A stretch of 64,000 bases of DNA from sequence record LR756501.1. One strand, 5' to 3'. Under the pieces are notes generated by a model. It made no database searches, was not told the origin of the DNA, and was given only the letters and a program-made list of their open reading frames with translations. Both the position numbers and the translations under genes were made by a program. Below are positions 59,282 through 63,769 of the stretch, in pieces. How positions within the stretch are numbered: position 1 is the stretch's first letter; every line of letters begins with the position of its first letter.

Positions 59282-60127
59282 ATGAAAGTTAAGAAACTAC
59301 AAGAATATAACACTAAAAGAATAATGGTCTTTAGTGGCTCAGCTAGATGTATGGACAATTGTCCTGGTCAAGATGGTAAGACTAATTATATTGTAGAACA
59401 AGCAATTAAAGACTTACCAAAAGACATAGAAATTGATCTGGTTGATCTTTCAGTTGAAACTGATAAACCTATTATTCAACCTTGTAAGGGCTGTATATCA
59501 ACCGCTGGTGGTGCTCACTGCCATTTTCCATGTGATTGTTACTTTAAAAAGAATAAAGATTATCCAGATTTAATGCACGATTTTGATATTTACAAAAGAC
59601 TTTTAAAAGCTGACGCTTTCATAGTATTTACTCCTATTAATTGGTGGAGTGTACCTACACAAGTTAAAGCAATGTTTGATAGATTAGTATGTGGTTCTCT
59701 TACCATTACAGATAAACAAGCACAAGAACTTTGGCCCGATGACGTTAAGAATCCTAAAAAGACAAAACCATTTTCAGACACAGAAAAATACAAAGAGATG
59801 GTAAAGAATCATTATGAAGGAAAGGTTGGAGCATTTTATGTTCACGGAGATGACGGAGCGGATGATTACAAGAACAGAGAAATGCCAGACTCTTATAAGA
59901 AATATGAAATAGGTAAATTTGACGAACCTATAAATACTATTAAACCTATTATCTGGCAATGTAGATATATGGGAATAGATGTACCTGATGAATTGGTTGA
60001 GGCTTTTTATATGAATGAAGATATAAGTTATAGTGACGCTAATGATAAGTTAAAGGAAGGTAAGTTGAATTTTGCTGTGAAGAAGGCTAGGAAATTAATT
60101 TTAGATACTTTTGATTATATAAAATAA
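59282..60127 (+). CDS. Flavodoxin-like NADPH-dependent FMN reductase / Fe-S flavoprotein
   Basis: FSGSAR, IQPCKGC..CHFPCDC, ADAFIVFTPINWWSVPTQVKAMFDRL. Confidence 0.85.
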   Translation: MKVKKLQEYNTKRIMVFSGSARCMDNCPGQDGKTNYIVEQAIKDLPKDIEIDLVDLSVETDKPIIQPCKGCISTAGGAHCHFPCDCYFKKNKDYPDLMHDFDIYKRLLKADAFIVFTPINWWSVPTQVKAMFDRLVCGSLTITDKQAQELWPDDVKNPKKTKPFSDTEKYKEMVKNHYEGKVGAFYVHGDDGADDYKNREMPDSYKKYEIGKFDEPINTIKPIIWQCRYMGIDVPDELVEAFYMNEDISYSDANDKLKEGKLNFAVKKARKLILDTFDYIK

Positions 60128-61038: not shown

Positions 61039-61089
61039 TTAAAACAAATTTCAATTATTAATATATAAATAAAAAAGGAGAAACAAACA

Positions 61090-61473
61090 ATGTCGTAGAT
61101 TTACAAATTAATCGTAGTAACAAGACAAGATCTTACCCCTGGCTATCAAGCCACACAGGCAACTCACGCCGCATTATTATTCGCACAAGAATTTCCATAG
61201 ATTTATGAGCAGTGGTCAAAAGACCCTTATTTAGCTTTGCTTTCTGTTAAGAATGAGCAAGAGCTTCGTATTCTCATATCCAAATTAGAAAAATCCAAAA
61301 TCAAATTTTCAGTATTCAGGGAACCTGATATTAACAATCAGATTACCGCTATCTGTATTGAACCTTCTGAAGCATCCAGAAAGGCTACTAGCTCTTTGCC
61401 CCAAATGTTAAGAGACTTGAAGACTGAGAATCAGATTGATAAAAATAATTACGTAAAGGAGGAAGTATTATGA
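61090..61473 (+). CDS. Pth2-family peptidyl-tRNA hydrolase with two in-frame TAG codons (codons 3 and 37)
   Basis: SD AAGGAG, then M-S-*-IYKLIVVTRQDLTPGYQATQATHAALLFAQEFP-*-IYEQW..LLSVKNEQEL..FREPDINNQITAICIEP..SSLPQM. TAGs at 61096-61098 and 61198-61200. The ORF track shows only the 3' part (61237-61473). Confidence 0.85.
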
Positions 61474-61736
61474 AAGAAATTAAATGTTACACATGTAAAA
61501 GTAGAAACTTAGATCCTGTTCCAGAAGATTTACCGTGTGTTGATTGTTGGAATGAAATGGACTATGTTAATTATGAACCTAAAACAACAGAAGAATTAAA
61601 AAAACAATTTGAAGATAGAAGATGGGATCTTTTAGATTGGTTGAACTCAGCGAGAGAAATAGACGATGAGGTATTAACAATATCAGATGAAATGGAATCA
61701 ATATTAAACGAACTTAAAGAAAGGAAAACAAAATGA
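61470..61736 (+). CDS. Small Cys-motif protein
   Basis: CYTC..PCVDC; SD upstream. Confidence 0.7.
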   Translation: MKEIKCYTCKSRNLDPVPEDLPCVDCWNEMDYVNYEPKTTEELKKQFEDRRWDLLDWLNSAREIDDEVLTISDEMESILNELKERKTK

Positions 61737-62080
61737 AAAAATTAGAATTAGAAATTAAGAATTGTAGTGGATGTCCATACTTGACTTATGATAGTCATTA
61801 TTCAATGAGTAGAGATAGTGGATATGATTGTAAAAAATCACACAGAAGGGTTATTGATGATTGGGATTACAATAATACCAATAATCCTAAAAGATTAGTC
61901 CAAGATTGGGATAACAGTTATCCAATTCCATCGCCTGATTGGTGTCCATTAGAAGATAAATTGGAATTTGATTTTGGTAATCCAATGGAAGGAAAAGAAT
62001 TAGAAATATTAAAAAAGACAGCAAGTAGATTGATTTCAAATAAACCAACAACATTAAATAAAAAGGGGGAAACAAAATGA
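61733..62080 (+). CDS. Small Cys-motif protein
   Basis: IKNCSGCPY..YDCKK..IPSPDWCPL. Confidence 0.7.
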   Translation: MKKLELEIKNCSGCPYLTYDSHYSMSRDSGYDCKKSHRRVIDDWDYNNTNNPKRLVQDWDNSYPIPSPDWCPLEDKLEFDFGNPMEGKELEILKKTASRLISNKPTTLNKKGETK

Positions 62081-62541
62081 AAACTTATAAAGAAAAAACA
62101 ACAACTTACGTCCCTAAAGAAATTGAGGTAGATGTTTGGAAAACAGATGATGGTAGAACTTTCAGAAATGAAAATGAAGCTATTAAACACGAAGAATGGC
62201 TCAACAAAAGAAAATCAATATCAAATAAATATAAATGTAAAGATATTTATACAGACGATTATGGTATCTCAGTTGATAGTGGTTGGGAAACATCAGCAAA
62301 AATGATGTACATTGAAAAACTTGACGATGAAACTATTAAAGATTTGATGGAATTATATGAATATTTAAAATATAATGGAAGACAATTAAAGGATATGAAA
62401 CCAGGTTGGAATATTTTTGTCGAATCTGAATATGATTCAAACTCTTGTAGCAGATGGGGAGGTTATGATTTAAGTATCTATAATGTTAACGATGTTATGG
62501 AACAAAAAATAAAACAAATAGAAAGGTTAAAAGAATTATGA
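62077..62541 (+). CDS. Hypothetical protein
   Basis: WKTDDGRTFRNENEAIKHE. Confidence 0.7.
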   Translation: MKTYKEKTTTYVPKEIEVDVWKTDDGRTFRNENEAIKHEEWLNKRKSISNKYKCKDIYTDDYGISVDSGWETSAKMMYIEKLDDETIKDLMELYEYLKYNGRQLKDMKPGWNIFVESEYDSNSCSRWGGYDLSIYNVNDVMEQKIKQIERLKEL

Positions 62542-62918
62542 AAGAATTAGAAAATGTTAAAATGTTGTATGGGTCAGGTTGGTGGGACGGCCCTTTAAGT
62601 GGGCTTTGTGAATATGAAAATAAAATGTATTGGTTTAGTGTTCATCAAGAAGAAGAGTATGACGAAGAGAAAGAAGAATGGGGATATAGAATTCACAAAC
62701 TTATTGAAATAGAACCTTGGCAATTAGCTTATGAATTATATTGGCATAGTGTGTTTGTGAGTAATGTTTACAGAAATGCAAAATGCAGAACTCAATTTGA
62801 AGAAAATCTAAAAAATGAAAGATTCTATATGAAAGAAGATTTCTACAAGAAAAGGAAAAAAGAACATAAAGAGATAGATTATAGTAATAATAATGTTATT
62901 GGAACATTTAAATTTTAA
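62538..62918 (+). CDS. Hypothetical protein
   Basis: WWDGPLSGLCEY..MYWF. Confidence 0.7.
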   Translation: MKELENVKMLYGSGWWDGPLSGLCEYENKMYWFSVHQEEEYDEEKEEWGYRIHKLIEIEPWQLAYELYWHSVFVSNVYRNAKCRTQFEENLKNERFYMKEDFYKKRKKEHKEIDYSNNNVIGTFKF

Positions 62919-62934
62919 AAGAAAGGAGAACGAT

Positions 62935-62958
62935 ATGTCGTAGAGTAGGCCGCCTTAA
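62935..62958 (+). other. SD-led amber mini-ORF / leader: ATG TCG TAG AGT AGG CCG CCT TAA (M-S-*-S-R-P-P-stop)
   Basis: AAAGGAG 7 nt upstream of the ATG; first 9 nt identical to the Pth2 gene start. Confidence 0.55.
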
Positions 62959-63054
62959 AGGTGATACAGAAAACCAGCAAAACAAGTTTAATCACTATCG
63001 ACTTGTAAATAAAAGATAGTGAATATAAAACAACAAAAAATAAAATATAAAATT

Positions 63055-63471
63055 ATGGAAACAACATTAAAAGCTGGTGTTACGTACACCTATAATAGAA
63101 GTGAATTAGACAAGAAAATCTGTGATACTATTAATTTTATCAAAGAAGTAATCGCGAAGAATGATTACCAAGTAAAAGGAAACATTGAAGAACTTTACGT
63201 TCTTGAGTACCCTAACTTATCAATGAATCAGATGAAGAAGATTCAGAAATATTGTTACTGGATTCAGAGGAATCCTTCTTTGAAGAAGATCAATACTTTC
63301 TTTAGTTTATTATCAAAACTCTTTGGGGTTGAGAGAGTACAAGTGAAAATTTCTTTGAAAGAAGAAGCTATCCAGAAAGCTAAGAAAGAATGGATCAAAT
63401 CTAGAAATGAAGCCGATAGACTTTTAAAGGCTTATAAGGATGAAAAAGGTGATTTTTACAAAAGAAAATAA
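63055..63471 (+). CDS. Hypothetical protein (C-terminal KAKKEWIKSRNEADRLLKAYKDEKGDFYK)
   Basis: Start moved to the ATG at 63055; lies between the amber leader and the suppressor tRNAs. Confidence 0.75.
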   Translation: METTLKAGVTYTYNRSELDKKICDTINFIKEVIAKNDYQVKGNIEELYVLEYPNLSMNQMKKIQKYCYWIQRNPSLKKINTFFSLLSKLFGVERVQVKISLKEEAIQKAKKEWIKSRNEADRLLKAYKDEKGDFYKRK

Positions 63472-63524
63472 TTTTTTAGTTTAAAAATTATATGTATATT
63501 TGTGGAGTGAAATTCTCCACAAAT

Positions 63525-63597
63525 CCCTCGTTAGCTCATTTGGAAGAGTGTCAGATTCTAGCTCTGACGGTAGTAGGTTCGAATCCTACACGGGGGT
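63525..63597 (+). tRNA. Amber suppressor tRNA, anticodon CUA (copy 1)
   Basis: Acceptor CCCTCGT/ACGGGGG, D-stem GCTC/GAGT with GG, anticodon arm TCAGA-TTCTAGC-TCTGA (CTA at 63558-63560), T-arm GTAGG-TTCGAAT-CCTAC. CCA not encoded. Confidence 0.92.
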
Positions 63598-63602
63598 CAA
63601 AA

Positions 63603-63677
63603 CGGATAGTAGCTTAGCCAGGCCAAAAGCATCGGTCTCTAAAACCGATATCGAGGGTTCAAATCCCTCCTATCTGA
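63603..63677 (+). tRNA. Amber suppressor tRNA, anticodon CUA (copy 2, tRNA-Trp-like anticodon arm)
   Basis: Acceptor CGGATAG/CTATCTG, D-stem GCTT/AAGC, anticodon arm TCGGT-CTCTAAA-ACCGA (CTA at 63639-63641), T-arm GAGGG-TTCAAAT-CCCTC. Confidence 0.92.
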
Positions 63678-63769
63678 CTAAAAATAATCACCCTGATTAT
63701 CAACGTCTTCTTACGTTTGCCCCCATTTTAGAAAAAACTAGTAAAAAAGTTTAATATATACTCAGGTAT

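What the first reader, a model, noticed from the sequence alone, without database searches (positions are those of the whole stretch)
61059..63680. Candidate amber-gated translation-control system: two CUA suppressor tRNAs, a TAG-interrupted Pth2 and an amber leader in a standard-code genome
Seen: within 2.6 kb lie two CUA tRNAs, a Pth2 gene needing two TAG read-throughs, and a second SD-led ATG-TCG-TAG mini-ORF. The other ORFs here, including the long RNR, GroEL and topoisomerase genes, have no internal TAG. Only about four genes end in TAG (18012, 46647, 55910, 58505). Known: some phages recode TAG genome-wide (code 15) with suppressor tRNAs, and Pth recycles peptidyl-tRNA that drops off ribosomes. 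Inference: this is a gene-specific switch. Pth2 is made only when suppressor tRNA outcompetes RF1, which is when suppression, mistranslation or drop-off would make extra Pth useful.
Basis: partly seen in the sequence, partly recalled or inferred. Interest (0 to 1): 0.92.

Follow-up and report, generated by a model that had tools for sequence, protein, structure and literature searches.

The report
Amber-gated Pth2 and suppressor tRNA cassette
A giant phage that otherwise uses the standard genetic code carries two amber-suppressor tRNAs next to exactly two reading frames that need them, a peptidyl-tRNA-hydrolase-like gene and a tiny leader ending in Pro-Pro-stop, and this cassette is conserved in dozens of large phages and appears undescribed.

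Summary
The window (100% identical to the 735,411-bp phage LR756501.1) holds two canonical tRNA(CUA) genes, a Pth2-family ORF with in-frame TAG at codons 3 and 37, and a second SD-led ATG-TCG-TAG frame. Scans of the whole genome found no other credible in-frame TAG, so this is not code 15.

The arrangement is conserved, not accidental. Of 59 distinct homologues in public phage contigs, 53 have ATG, 1-5 codons, then TAG just before the mature N-terminus. Fifty have a suppressor tRNA within 3.7 kb, always on the same strand. The second frame is a conserved 7-10-codon mini-ORF, M-x-TAG-(I/V)...(K/R)(A)-P-P-TAA, found in about 22 loci. It resembles RAPP arrest peptides and lies upstream of a conserved unknown gene.

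In the single phage whose linked tRNA is UUA, both gates are TAA and the mini-ORF's terminal stop becomes TAG.

Best reading: a lock-and-key translational circuit in which suppressor tRNAs license two dedicated targets. Why a Pth2-like enzyme is the target remains inferred. A literature search found no description of it. A cultured phage (Tenacibaculum pT24) carries the gate, so it is testable.

The parts
61077..61080 (+). Shine-Dalgarno GGAG of the Pth2-like gene, 9 nt before the ATG
   Evidence: Read directly from the sequence. The spacing fits the ATG at 61090, not the ATT after the TAG.
61090..61098 (+). Amber leader ATG TCG TAG (first gate, TAG at 61096-61098), followed by ATT
   Evidence: The same M-x(1-5)-TAG-(ATT/GTA) leader occurs in 53 of 59 distinct homologues, and the base after the TAG is always A or G.
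61090..61473 (+). Pth2-like (PF01981) ORF of 127 codons that needs read-through of two TAGs. The second TAG is at 61198-61200 and the terminal stop is TGA.
   Evidence: Both pieces match Pfam PTH2 collinearly. Relatives match PTH2 7/7, best E 6e-13. A profile of relatives hits archaeal Pth2 2zv3 at E 5e-9. An AF2 model of a relative has pLDDT 93.9, and its top 14 PDB hits are Pth2-family proteins (archaeal Pth2 and homologues, human Bit1), the best at TM 0.70-0.77. The second TAG is shared with L016, L145 and L154, and with the distant L210.
61470..62918 (+). Four small overlapping or abutting ORFs of unknown function (88, 115, 154 and 126 aa) between the Pth2-like gene and the mini-ORF
   Evidence: Searches give no family match. 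The stop/start overlaps suggest one transcription unit, and no terminator-like site lies between them.
62925..62958 (+). SD (62925-62928) plus the amber-gated mini-ORF ATG TCG TAG AGT AGG CCG CCT TAA (M-S-*-S-R-P-P-stop)
   Evidence: Conserved as M-x-TAG-x..(K/R)(A)-P-P-TAA in about 22 distinct loci, with synonymous changes at the Pro codons. Controls with an internal TAA or TGA give 4 and 1 hits. It is the only such frame in the 735-kb genome. In the tRNA(UUA) phage it reads ATG ACG TAA ... CCA CCG TAG.
63001..63034 (+). Small hairpin TCACTATC-N15-GATAGTGA between the mini-ORF and the next gene
   Evidence: One compensatory pair is seen among close relatives, and other lineages have different hairpins at this place. 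The folding z-score is only -1.35, so this is weak.
63055..63471 (+). 138-aa protein METTLKAGVTYTYN..., the gene that always follows the mini-ORF
   Evidence: In 21 loci an ORF starting ME-T or MK-T begins 52-122 nt after the mini-ORF. It has no Pfam or PHROG match.
63500..63523 (+). 8-bp hairpin TTGTGGAG-N8-CTCCACAA immediately 5' of the first tRNA
   Evidence: Read from the sequence. Its function was not tested; it may be a processing site or a terminator-like element.
63525..63598 (+). Suppressor tRNA 1, anticodon CUA, with G37 and U73
   Evidence: It is only 53% identical to tRNA 2, and its closest genomic tRNAs (Arg) are at 70%, so its amino-acid identity is unresolved.
63603..63678 (+). 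Suppressor tRNA 2, anticodon CUA, loop CUCUAAA, A73
   Evidence: The same acceptor type (CGGATAG...) occurs in L144, L150, L151 and L156.

Best explanation
This is a conserved phage translational lock-and-key cassette.

The keys are one or two phage-encoded suppressor tRNAs with anticodon CUA.

The first lock is a phage-specific Pth2-fold hydrolase gene. Its translation aborts at a TAG placed 1-5 codons after the ATG (here also at codon 37) unless the suppressor out-competes release factor 1. The amount of enzyme made therefore tracks UAG read-through activity in the infected cell.

The second lock is a 7-10-codon leader. Without suppression it terminates after two codons. With suppression it runs on to (K/R)(A)-Pro-Pro followed by a stop codon that the suppressor does not read. 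That is an RAPP-like, termination-resistant C-terminus expected to stall the ribosome. The stall would report suppressor activity to the downstream ME-T/MK-T gene and perhaps to the tRNA genes beyond it.

The rest of the genome uses the standard code.

Shown here: the sequence anatomy, the Pth2 fold, conservation, linkage, stop/anticodon covariation, and specificity to these two frames.

Inferred: that read-through occurs, which amino acid is inserted, that the Pro-Pro-stop leader stalls ribosomes, and the adaptive reason. The favoured reason is that the enzyme recycles peptidyl-tRNA produced as a side effect of suppression, or must be kept strictly off until the phage translation kit is working.
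For: 1. Anatomy.

2. Family and fold. The two pieces match PTH2 collinearly. Relatives match PF01981 7/7. A profile hits archaeal Pth2 at E 5e-9. The AF2 model has pLDDT 93.9, and its top 14 PDB hits are Pth2-family proteins (archaeal Pth2 and homologues, human Bit1), the best at TM 0.70-0.77.

3. Conservation of a stop codon across 30-88% amino-acid identity.
- 53 of 59 distinct homologues have ATG + 1-5 codons + TAG with no canonical start after it.
- Four further huge-phage genomes also have the leader.
- The cultured Tenacibaculum phage pT24 has it too.
- Divergent members without the early TAG carry one internal TAG instead (L206, L207, L210).

4. Linkage. 50 of 59 loci have a suppressor tRNA within 3.7 kb (median 1.1 kb), and 61 of 61 are on the same strand. 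Of 117 unrelated viral loci, only 9 have one. All 9 turned out to carry the same leader, either on a Pth2-like gene or the mini-ORF of a Pth2 module, or on a second gated gene family.

5. Covariation. The one phage with tRNA(UUA) and a TAA gate has TAA in the Pth2 leader and in the mini-ORF. Its mini-ORF ends in TAG instead of TAA.

6. Specificity.
- The 735-kb genome has 59 tRNAs, and only these 2 are suppressors.
- TAG-bridged coding pairs are no commoner than TAG's 5% share of stops.
- The SD-ATG-x-TAG+ORF scan gives two hits: this gene and a site at genome 131576 whose TAG is directly followed by ATG, so an ordinary start.
- In relatives' flanks, 37 of 40 such TAG leaders belong to Pth2 or to duplicated Pth2 5' ends, against 6 (TAA) and 5 (TGA) controls.
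- The ORF gain from reading TAG as sense is no larger than the TGA control.

7. Context. The base after gate TAGs is A (41) or G (12), never a pyrimidine. Genuine TAG terminators in this genome have 12 pyrimidines out of 28. A purine at that position is the classical good-suppression context (my own knowledge: Bossi 1983; Miller and Albertini 1983).

8. Mini-ORF. About 22 distinct loci carry it, with synonymous Pro-codon changes. RAPP arrest motifs are documented (PMC10951233). The link between C-terminal proline and SsrA tagging is cited in PMC11890864.

9. Wider partnership. The Pth2-like gene also sits beside a suppressor tRNA in phages where the frame carries no internal stop (TAG-recoded Lak-A1) or where a start directly after the TAG makes read-through unnecessary (Catera, Myrna). 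This suggests a functional partnership beyond the gate.
Against: - There is no experimental evidence of read-through, of the amino acid inserted, or of hydrolase activity.
- The window's own two Pth2 pieces are each below Pfam's gathering score (13.1 and 16.8 against 23 bits).
- The family lacks the Gly-Lys dipeptide of the canonical GKGK loop and has Glu where archaeal Pth2 has the RD-motif Asp (alignment). The substrate may therefore not be ordinary peptidyl-tRNA.
- The codon after the TAG is ATT, ATC or ATA in 36 of 53 cases. These are weak start codons, so termination followed by reinitiation is not excluded for the first gate.
- In mycobacteriophages the SD is spaced for the GTG after the TAG, so the gate is not universal. 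XacN1 and Lak-A1 are ungated.
- Nine of 59 loci show no suppressor in the fetched flank, although four of those flanks are cut short.
- The tRNA and the gated gene are probably co-transcribed, which argues against a simple early/late timer.
- The RNA structure after the mini-ORF is weak.
- Only this one genome was scanned whole. Relatives were scanned only in flanks of 10 kb or less.
Confidence: 0.8

Rival explanations
1. Incipient or partial code-15 recoding. On this reading the phage acquired suppressor tRNAs, and in-frame TAGs are now accumulating more or less neutrally (the route proposed by Borges et al.). Pth2 merely happens to be the first gene hit, with no dedicated regulatory role.
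For: The Borges preprint describes suppressor acquisition by standard-code relatives that precedes recoding, along with depletion of TAG stops in low-GC phages. TAG terminates only 5.4% of long ORFs here. Lak phages, which are fully TAG-recoded, carry the same Pth2-like gene next to a suppressor tRNA.
Against: - Neutral accumulation would scatter TAGs over many genes and positions. Here the same gene carries the TAG at the same place in 53 of 59 diverged homologues, while flanks and the whole 735-kb genome have none.
- The second target is a purpose-built mini-ORF with peptide-level conservation.
- Both targets and the mini-ORF's terminal stop switch together with the anticodon.
Confidence: 0.08
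2. Suppressor-independent start-stop coupling. On this reading ATG-x-TAG is a two-codon upstream ORF whose terminating ribosome reinitiates at the adjacent AUU, AUA or GUN codon. The neighbouring CUA tRNAs would serve another purpose.
For: In 36 of 53 cases the codon after the TAG is ATT, ATC or ATA, which are rare bacterial start codons. In Catera and Myrna a GTG directly follows the TAG, and the SD is spaced for it.
Against: - It cannot explain internal TAGs at codon 37 (window, L016, L145, L154, L210) or elsewhere (L185, L206, L207).
- It cannot explain why the stop is always TAG and never TGA.
- It cannot explain why the stop becomes TAA exactly where the tRNA is UUA.
- It cannot explain the same-strand linkage to suppressor tRNAs.
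- Seventeen of the 53 following codons are GTA, GTT, AAC, AGC, AAT, GGC or AGA, which do not initiate.
Confidence: 0.06
3. A decaying pseudogene or an assembly or sequencing error, with the suppressor tRNAs nearby by coincidence.
For: There are two nonsense codons in a 127-codon ORF. The ORF's codon-usage score is low (0.19 and 0.08 per codon).
Against: The same stops appear in dozens of independent assemblies, with intact downstream frames across 30-88% identity. The frame is still the best of six. Both nonsense codons are TAG in a 32% GC genome where TAA dominates.
Confidence: 0.01
4. The Pth2-like product is harmful, and the amber gate is a safety catch rather than a dosage sensor. For example, it might hydrolyse fMet-tRNA or other N-blocked aminoacyl-tRNAs and shut down host initiation. 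The gate would keep it strictly off until the phage's own tRNA kit is expressed. The gating mechanism is the same as in the best explanation; only the purpose differs.
For: - The gate sits at the very start, so no truncated product is made.
- Some genes carry two gates (window, L016, L145, L154, L185), which multiplies tightness.
- The active-site loop differs from canonical Pth2.
- The family is confined to phage contigs in the scan of 185,579 species' genomes, which returned 3 hits, all phage-like MAG contigs.
Against: No toxicity data exist. Ungated versions occur in Lak-A1, XacN1 and probably the mycobacteriophages. My recollection that archaeal Pth2 does not discriminate the initiator tRNA could not be confirmed in the searchable literature.
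Confidence: 0.25

Closest known systems
Stop-codon recoding in phages (code 15 / code 4) with suppressor tRNAs as proposed regulators of late and lysis genes (Borges et al., bioRxiv 10.1101/2021.08.26.457843; Lak and crAss-like phages)
   Same: [quoted passage not shown] Lak-A1 even has the same Pth2-like gene beside a suppressor tRNA.
   Different: Here the genome is standard-code and only two dedicated frames carry the stop. The stop sits at a fixed place (codons 2-6) next to the key tRNA. The targets are a translation-recycling-type enzyme and a leader peptide, not structural or lysis genes. That preprint does not contain the word 'hydrolase'.
prfB (RF2) autoregulation by an in-frame UGA
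   Same: In both, a translation-apparatus gene carries an early in-frame stop whose decoding outcome reports the balance between termination and an alternative event.
   Different: prfB escapes by +1 frameshifting and senses its own product. Here escape is by a dedicated suppressor tRNA encoded alongside, and the product is not a release factor.
RAPP / SecM-type ribosome arrest leader peptides (ApdA, ApdP; PMC10951233) and TnaC-type termination arrest
   Same: Both have a short upstream ORF ending in (R/K)(A)PP just before a stop, placed 50-120 nt ahead of a regulated gene. L021 and L175 read exactly RAPP-stop.
   Different: The phage leader is only 7-10 codons long. The arrest motif is reached only after amber read-through. 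The window copy reads S-R-P-P, not RAPP. Stalling is untested.
Lambda bar minigenes (two-codon ORFs whose peptidyl-tRNA drop-off is lethal when Pth is limiting; own knowledge)
   Same: Without suppression, both leaders are SD-led ATG-NNN-stop minigenes, and they are physically tied to a peptidyl-tRNA-hydrolase-type gene.
   Different: The second codon is not conserved (TCG, TCA, ACG, AAA, AAT ...). The stop is always the suppressible one, and the frames continue meaningfully after it. No toxicity is known.
Archaeal/eukaryotic Pth2 (PF01981; PDB 2zv3, 1wn2, 1xty, human Bit1 1q7s)
   Same: The fold is the same (TM 0.70-0.77) and the length is the same. The K-L-x-V-x-x-R-x-D-L N-terminal strand and the Q...H helix motif are also shared.
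   Different: This is a phage-only subfamily with an FREPDI-x-N-x-x-TA signature. It has a two-residue deletion in the GKGK loop and Glu in place of the RD-motif Asp. Its activity is unknown.
Synthetic amber-codon gating of toxic or reporter genes with an orthogonal suppressor tRNA (genetic code expansion practice; own knowledge)
   Same: The logic is identical: a gene is silent unless the cognate suppressor is supplied, and two ambers are used for tightness.
   Different: This is a natural, conserved, mobile cassette.

Membership tests
Pth2 peptidyl-tRNA hydrolase family (PF01981) | Sequence match to the family profile at or above the curated threshold | tested here: met
   Seven of 7 uninterrupted relatives match, with a best E of 6e-13 and member 1 at 27.3 bits against a cut-off of 23. 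The window's two pieces match collinearly but are each below the cut-off (13.1 and 16.8 bits). Piece 2 is 40-88% identical to those relatives.
Pth2 peptidyl-tRNA hydrolase family (PF01981) | Pth2 alpha/beta fold | tested here: met
   The AF2 model of relative L144 has pLDDT 93.9 and pTM 0.85. The 14 best PDB hits are Pth2-family proteins (archaeal Pth2 and homologues, human Bit1), the best at TM 0.70-0.77, with E down to 8e-8. The window's own protein was not modelled because it would have to be read through stops.
Pth2 peptidyl-tRNA hydrolase family (PF01981) | Catalytic residues of archaeal Pth2 (the Lys of the GKGK loop and the Asp of the RDAG motif; residue roles are from my own knowledge of the S. 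solfataricus work) | tested here: inconclusive
   The profile alignment to 2zv3 places a two-residue gap at the 'gk' of GMGKgk, and it aligns F-R-E-P-D with I-R-D-A-G. The Lys may therefore be missing and the Asp replaced by Glu. Other polar residues are invariant or nearly so (R9, D11, Q20, H23, R74, E75, D77).
Pth2 peptidyl-tRNA hydrolase family (PF01981) | Hydrolysis of peptidyl-tRNA or N-acyl-aminoacyl-tRNA | not testable with these tools
   This needs an enzyme assay or complementation of E. coli pth(ts).
Nonsense-suppressor tRNA | Canonical tRNA cloverleaf with an anticodon complementary to a stop codon | tested here: met
   ARAGORN and Rfam agree. Hand numbering gives U33-C34-U35-A36, a 7-bp acceptor stem, a 5-bp anticodon stem and a T-loop of TTCGAAT or TTCAAAT.
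Nonsense-suppressor tRNA | Aminoacylation and decoding of UAG in vivo | not testable with these tools
   The amino-acid identity is unresolved. The best matches among the genome's own tRNAs are only 70-75% (Arg; Cys/Trp). The 65 distinct linked suppressors are very diverse. Uninterrupted homologues have E/D/Q/K at the internal TAG columns.
Pyrrolysine system (ARAGORN labels CUA tRNAs 'Pyl') | Atypical tRNA-Pyl architecture plus pylS and pylBCD genes | tested here: not met
   The tRNAs are canonical, with high Rfam tRNA scores and a normal D-loop and variable loop. The pyl genes were not searched for specifically.
Code-15 (TAG-recoded) phage genome | Many genes with in-frame TAG, and low coding density under code 11 | tested here: not met
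   Whole-genome scans gave these results.
- TAG-bridged coding pairs number 2-4, against 24-56 for TAA.
- The ORF gain from reading TAG as sense is 1.01-1.08 in 13 of 15 chunks, no more than the TGA control. The two exceptions are alternative frames of giant repetitive genes.
- By contrast, the Lak-A1 locus gains 3-fold.
RAPP-like ribosome arrest leader peptide | R/K-A-P-P or a related motif at the arrest point, in a short ORF upstream of the regulated gene | tested here: inconclusive
   The motif family (K/R)(A)PP-stop is present in about 20 of about 22 mini-ORFs, and it reads exactly RAPP in L021 and L175. The window reads SRPP. A downstream ORF follows at 52-122 nt in 21 loci. Known RAPP peptides are much longer.
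RAPP-like ribosome arrest leader peptide | Demonstrated ribosome stalling and downstream regulation | not testable with these tools
   This needs toeprinting or ribosome profiling, and reporter fusions.
Lambda bar-type minigene | SD-led two-codon ORF whose expression is toxic when Pth is limiting | not testable with these tools
   The sequence form is present at 61090 and 62935. Toxicity is untested. The variable second codon argues against targeting of one tRNA.

The most novel reading that the evidence does not exclude
The cassette may be a self-contained natural 'amber circuit'. A dedicated suppressor tRNA would act as a trans-acting translational activator for exactly two cis targets. One is a Pth2-fold enzyme. 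The other is an amber-gated arrest peptide that measures UAG read-through against RF1 and relays it to a downstream gene of unknown function.

Such a circuit would be a new class of gene regulation by tRNA. It would also be a plausible stepping stone from the standard code to full TAG reassignment in phages. It would explain 'orphan' suppressor tRNAs in standard-code jumbo phages, whose targets have been reported as unknown (XacN1 paper). It is mobile enough to have been captured by a second gene family and by homing endonucleases.
Probability: 0.45. Interest if true: 0.92.

Novelty: new variant of a known kind. Interest (0 to 1): 0.86.

Why it matters
Suppressor tRNAs are common in large phages that do not use an alternative code, and their targets have been an open question. 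The XacN1 authors searched for targets and found none. This cassette supplies concrete, conserved targets, and with them a testable function.

It shows that stop-codon suppression can be used in nature as a gene-specific switch rather than a genome-wide code change. It links suppression to peptidyl-tRNA-hydrolase-type chemistry and to arrest-peptide sensing. It offers an intermediate on the path to code 15.

There is also a practical consequence. Standard gene callers truncate or miss these genes, as in the pT24 gp293 annotation, and some tRNA annotations are wrong (Catera 'tRNA-Arg', Myrna 'tRNA-Ser').

Finally, the tRNA and leader pairs are a natural library of matched suppressor and context parts for genetic-code engineering.

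Tried and rejected
- A naive search for TAG-bridged ORFs suggested a gene with 8 in-frame TAGs at genome 405.9-408.6 kb. This proved to be an alternative frame of a 3,483-codon repetitive gene and was rejected.
- Codon-usage-filtered scans with TAA and TGA controls then found no excess of in-frame TAG.
- Backup stops after TAG-terminated genes are no closer than after TAA or TGA, so there is no sign of genome-wide adaptation to read-through.
- The amino-acid identity of the tRNAs could not be assigned by similarity to the genome's 57 other tRNAs or from the columns aligned to internal TAGs (E/D/Q/K).
- The motif scan GGAGAA-N-ATGTCGTAGA in IMG/VR returned mostly chance hits. It was reused as a control set, which turned out to be contaminated by true modules.
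- XacN1's Pth2-like domain is an ungated C-terminal fusion far from its tRNAs, so this cassette does not explain XacN1's suppressors.
- The mycobacteriophage copies have a TAG just upstream of the annotated GTG, but the SD spacing favours the GTG. They were not counted as gated.
- RNA structure after the mini-ORF is weak: z = -1.35 and one compensatory pair. The promoter and terminator scans were uninformative.
- Neighbouring ORFs have no family matches.
- Literature searches for Pth2 plus suppressor or recoding in phages found nothing relevant. A search to confirm Pth2 activity on fMet-tRNA was unproductive.

Full report
**Identity of the window.** The last 4 kb of the window is 100% identical to LR756501.1/LR756503.1, the unannotated 735,411-bp 'uncultured phage'. 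This is the largest genome of Al-Shayeb et al. 2020, whose text mentions neither suppressor tRNAs nor peptidyl-tRNA hydrolase. Window position 1 corresponds to record position 627,061. I fetched the record in 15 pieces so that genome-wide claims could be tested.

**The observation.** ARAGORN finds exactly two tRNAs in the window, at 63525-63598 and 63603-63678 on the + strand, both with anticodon CUA. Rfam scores them 57.8 and 63.8 bits as tRNA. Both number as canonical cloverleaves. They are only 53% identical to each other, so they are not a recent duplication.

The frame 61090-61473 reads MS*IYKLIVVTRQDLTPGYQATQATHAALLFAQEFP*IYEQW...EEVL*. Both internal stops are TAG and the terminal stop is TGA. 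GGAG lies 9 nt before the ATG. The 33-aa and 90-aa pieces match Pfam PTH2 at profile positions 1-31 and 42-103 (13.1 and 16.8 bits). The domain therefore spans the second TAG, and the ATG-TCG-TAG sits where the family's N-terminus belongs.

A second SD-led ATG TCG TAG starts at 62935. The 9-mer ATGTCGTAG occurs three times in the 1.47 Mb of both strands of the genome, and these are the only two with an SD.

**Is the genome recoded?** No.
- The genome has 59 tRNAs in three clusters on the other strand. The two CUA tRNAs are the only suppressors, and they sit alone, about 300 kb from the nearest cluster.
- ORFs of at least 150 aa end in TAA 402, TGA 91 and TAG 28 times.
- A first scan suggested a gene with eight in-frame TAGs near 406-409 kb. 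That frame overlaps a 3,483-codon repetitive gene and is an artefact.
- With a codon-usage filter and TAA/TGA controls, stops flanked by coding sequence on both sides number TAA 24-56, TAG 2-4 and TGA 0. TAG is thus no commoner than its share of ordinary terminators.
- A scan for SD-ATG, at most 12 codons, a stop, then a coding frame gave two TAG hits genome-wide. One is this gene. The other has its own ATG right after the stop.
- Reading TAG as sense lengthens ORFs by 1-8% in 13 of 15 chunks, no more than the TGA control.

**Relatives.** A scan of IMG/VR with piece 2 and then with an alignment of relatives returned 11 and 71 loci.

After removing duplicates there are 59 distinct homologues. 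Fifty-three have an ATG, 1-5 codons (two in 32 cases), then a stop directly before the mature N-terminus. None of these has a canonical start between the stop and the conserved K-L anchor. The other four huge genomes of the same study (462-642 kb) read MK*, MNN*, MT* and MKN*.

Divergent members without the early stop carry a single internal TAG instead (L206, L207, L210). L210 and four members of the window's clade share the F-P-TAG site. A nonsense codon kept at one place across 30-88% protein identity, with intact frames behind it, is under selection.

The family is PTH2. Seven of seven relatives match, with a best E of 6e-13. A profile hits archaeal Pth2 2zv3 at E 5e-9. An AlphaFold model of relative L144 (pLDDT 93.9) has Pth2-family proteins as its 14 best PDB hits, the best at TM 0.70-0.77. 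The alignment does show a two-residue deletion in the GKGK loop, and Glu where archaeal enzymes have the RD-motif Asp. Its chemistry may therefore differ.

A scan of one genome for each of 185,579 species found only three hits. All are MAG contigs that look like phage, and one is the same 425,361-bp contig as an IMG/VR entry. The subfamily therefore appears phage-specific.

**Link to the tRNAs.** Fifty of the 59 loci contain a suppressor tRNA within the fetched flank. The median distance is 1.1 kb and the maximum 3.6 kb, and 61 of 61 are on the same strand as the gene. Four of the nine loci without one have truncated flanks.

The 117 loci from an unrelated motif scan served as a control. Only nine carried a suppressor, and all nine turned out to hold the same leader. 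In three the leader belongs to a Pth2 module. In six it heads a second, unrelated gene family (MS*IEFxCxDxVFHFNKKHLED...) with a tRNA(CUA) about 30 nt upstream.

The decisive natural experiment is L024/L199. Its linked tRNA has anticodon UUA, and its Pth2 leader is ATG ACG TAA.

The base after gate TAGs is A in 41 cases and G in 12, never C or T. Real TAG terminators in this genome are followed by a pyrimidine in 12 of 28 cases. A purine there is the classical high-suppression context (own knowledge). The I/V codon stays next to the stop while its distance to the K-L anchor varies, so it belongs to the gate rather than to the fold.

**The second frame.** Read through, 62935-62958 is ATG TCG TAG AGT AGG CCG CCT TAA, that is M-S-*-S-R-P-P-stop. 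Close relatives read as follows:
- L016 and L154: M-S-*-V-K-P-P-stop
- L145: M-S-*-T-R-P-P-stop
- L036: M-S-*-I-K-P-P-stop

The last Pro codon changes synonymously between them (CCT, CCA, CCC).

A pattern search over all fetched loci found 28 such frames, about 22 of them distinct. They have the form M-x-TAG-(I/V)-x0-3-(K/R)(A)-P-P-TAA, including exact RAPP in L021 and L175 and KAPP in L170, L189 and L191. The same pattern built on an internal TAA gave 4 hits, and on an internal TGA gave 1. Two of the four TAA hits are the tRNA(UUA) phage. There the frame is ATG ACG TAA GTA AAT AAA CCA CCG TAG: the internal stop has become TAA and the terminal stop has become TAG.

Both gated frames thus follow the anticodon, and the leader's last stop is kept different from the suppressible one. 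The pattern occurs exactly once in the 735-kb genome.

In 21 loci the mini-ORF lies 52-122 nt upstream of an ORF of 53-180 aa that begins ME-T or MK-T and has no family match. In the window this is 63055-63471, followed by the tRNAs.

RAPP motifs stall ribosomes at the peptidyl-transferase centre (PMC10951233). C-terminal prolines hinder termination, and TnaC arrest sequesters tRNA-Pro (titles cited in PMC11890864). I therefore read the mini-ORF as an amber-gated arrest leader. Hairpins follow it in each lineage, but they differ in sequence and are weak. The way a stall would be relayed downstream is open.

**Mechanism.**
- Shown: two frames that can only be completed by decoding UAG; keys encoded alongside on the same strand, probably in one transcription unit (tight gene packing, with only a single chance-level terminator-like match, inside the 63055-63471 gene); and specificity, conservation and covariation.
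- Inferred: suppressor tRNA competes with RF1 at codon 3 (and at codon 37 here), so Pth2-like output rises steeply with suppressor activity. Two gates multiply the dependence.
- If key and lock are indeed co-transcribed, the arrangement is less a timer than an AND gate, or a sensor of working suppression (tRNA processed, charged, and beating RF1).

**Why a Pth2-fold enzyme?** The gene sits beside a suppressor tRNA even where the gate is absent or doubtful. This holds in TAG-recoded Lak-A1 (tRNA-UUA 770 nt upstream). It also holds in cluster C mycobacteriophages: in Catera the tRNA(CUA) is 250 nt downstream and is annotated tRNA-Arg, and in Myrna it is 130 nt downstream and is annotated tRNA-Ser. 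This suggests the enzyme deals with a consequence of suppression, such as peptidyl-tRNA from drop-off or from ribosomes that read through stops. A safety-catch role for a harmful enzyme is the main alternative purpose. Neither is tested.

**Rivals.**
- Neutral early recoding does not explain a fixed site in one gene, a purpose-built leader, or triple covariation.
- Reinitiation at the AUU after a start-stop ORF does not explain internal TAGs, the exclusive use of the suppressible stop, or the linkage.
- A pseudogene or assembly error is excluded by conservation.
- Pyrrolysine is unlikely because the tRNAs are canonical.

**Novelty.** Full-text searches combining Pth2 or peptidyl-tRNA hydrolase with suppressor tRNA, recoding and phage found no description. 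The Borges preprint proposes recoding as a regulator of late genes and notes suppressor acquisition by standard-code relatives, but it does not mention a hydrolase. The XacN1 paper states that targets of its CUA tRNAs could not be identified. XacN1's own Pth2-like domain is an ungated fusion, so this cassette does not solve that case.

The cultured Tenacibaculum phage pT24 has ATG AAA TAG ATA..., with a tRNA-Sup 2.6 kb upstream. Its annotated CDS starts inside the Pth2 domain, about 44 codons after the leader ATG (27 codons after the first conserved residue). This gives a laboratory system.

I rate this as a new variant of a known kind (suppression-based control in phages). The open possibility is that it is a distinct regulatory class.

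Noticed in passing
L150 2095-3130; L151 3030-4060; L167 1706-2460; L177 4169-4970; L148 3797-4990: Homing-endonuclease-like ORFs (HNH in L167; repeated IHGxF...GCPxC modules plus a C-terminal nuclease-like part in the others) are fused in frame to a duplicated Pth2 5' end. The duplication includes the M-x-TAG leader and 4-21 Pth2 codons, and it lies just upstream of the intact gated Pth2 gene. These mobile genes appear to have captured the amber gate.
   Followed up: partly
L041 901; L043 4034; L062 3055 (-); L085 3020; L118 13522; L123 14211: A second, unrelated gene family (MS*IEFxCxDxVFHFNKKHLEDxTIPMWVLKFHGETYYV...SHTKGSIKVK; no Pfam match) carries the identical leader GGAGAA-N-ATG TCG TAG ATT. 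In four of the six loci a tRNA(CUA) ends about 30 nt upstream of the gene. The gate-plus-key design is therefore not restricted to Pth2.
   Followed up: partly
L226 (Tenacibaculum phage pT24, NC_049383.1 194,086-195,036): The annotated CDS HYP10_gp293 starts about 44 codons after the leader ATG (27 codons after the first conserved Pth2 residue). The frame really begins ATG AAA TAG ATA and encodes a Pth2 domain plus a C-terminal extension of about 190 aa. The record's tRNA-Sup lies 2.6 kb upstream on the same strand.
   Followed up: yes
L215 3614-3687 (Catera) and L216 3466-3537 (Myrna): The tRNAs annotated tRNA-Arg (Catera) and tRNA-Ser (Myrna) directly downstream of the 'peptidyl tRNA hydrolase' gene are read by ARAGORN as anticodon CUA. 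About 200 cluster C mycobacteriophage records carry this gene. A TAG sits immediately before the annotated GTG start (ATG TAG GTG in Catera, GTG TAG GTG in Myrna).
   Followed up: partly
LR756501 record 102,876-118,625 (-) and 399,999-410,450 (-), outside the window: These are giant repetitive ORFs (3,483 codons at about 400-410 kb, and a stretch of about 5,000 codons at 103-118 kb). Their alternative frames are open except for TAG, so they mimic recoded genes in naive scans.
   Followed up: partly
L005 4243-4333, 28902-28971, 29021-29090 (record about 204-229 kb): ARAGORN reports three odd tRNA-like genes in the same genome. One has a four-base anticodon (ttac) and two have a two-base 'ta' anticodon call. 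The genome also encodes tRNA-Ser(CGA), which reads the rare TCG used as codon 2 of both leaders.
   Followed up: no
L217, L218, L219 (genome contigs): Contigs binned as Pacearchaeota, Methanobacterium and Saprospiraceae MAGs carry the phage Pth2 module. L217's contig has the same length (425,361 bp) as an IMG/VR viral contig. These are probably mis-binned phage sequences.
   Followed up: no
window 63500-63523: There is a perfect 8-bp hairpin (TTGTGGAG / CTCCACAA) one base before the 5' end of tRNA 1. It may be a processing or termination signal between the 138-aa gene and the tRNAs.
   Followed up: no
window 61090-61473: The Pth2-like gene has a much weaker codon-usage score than typical genes of this genome (0.19 and 0.08 per codon, against a threshold of 0.25 met by ordinary genes). 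This fits a mobile cassette exchanged among phages.
   Followed up: no
window 59282-60127: An FMN-reductase / flavodoxin-like gene (PF03358, E 1e-10) lies upstream. It is conserved in synteny with the cassette in L016 and L154.
   Followed up: no
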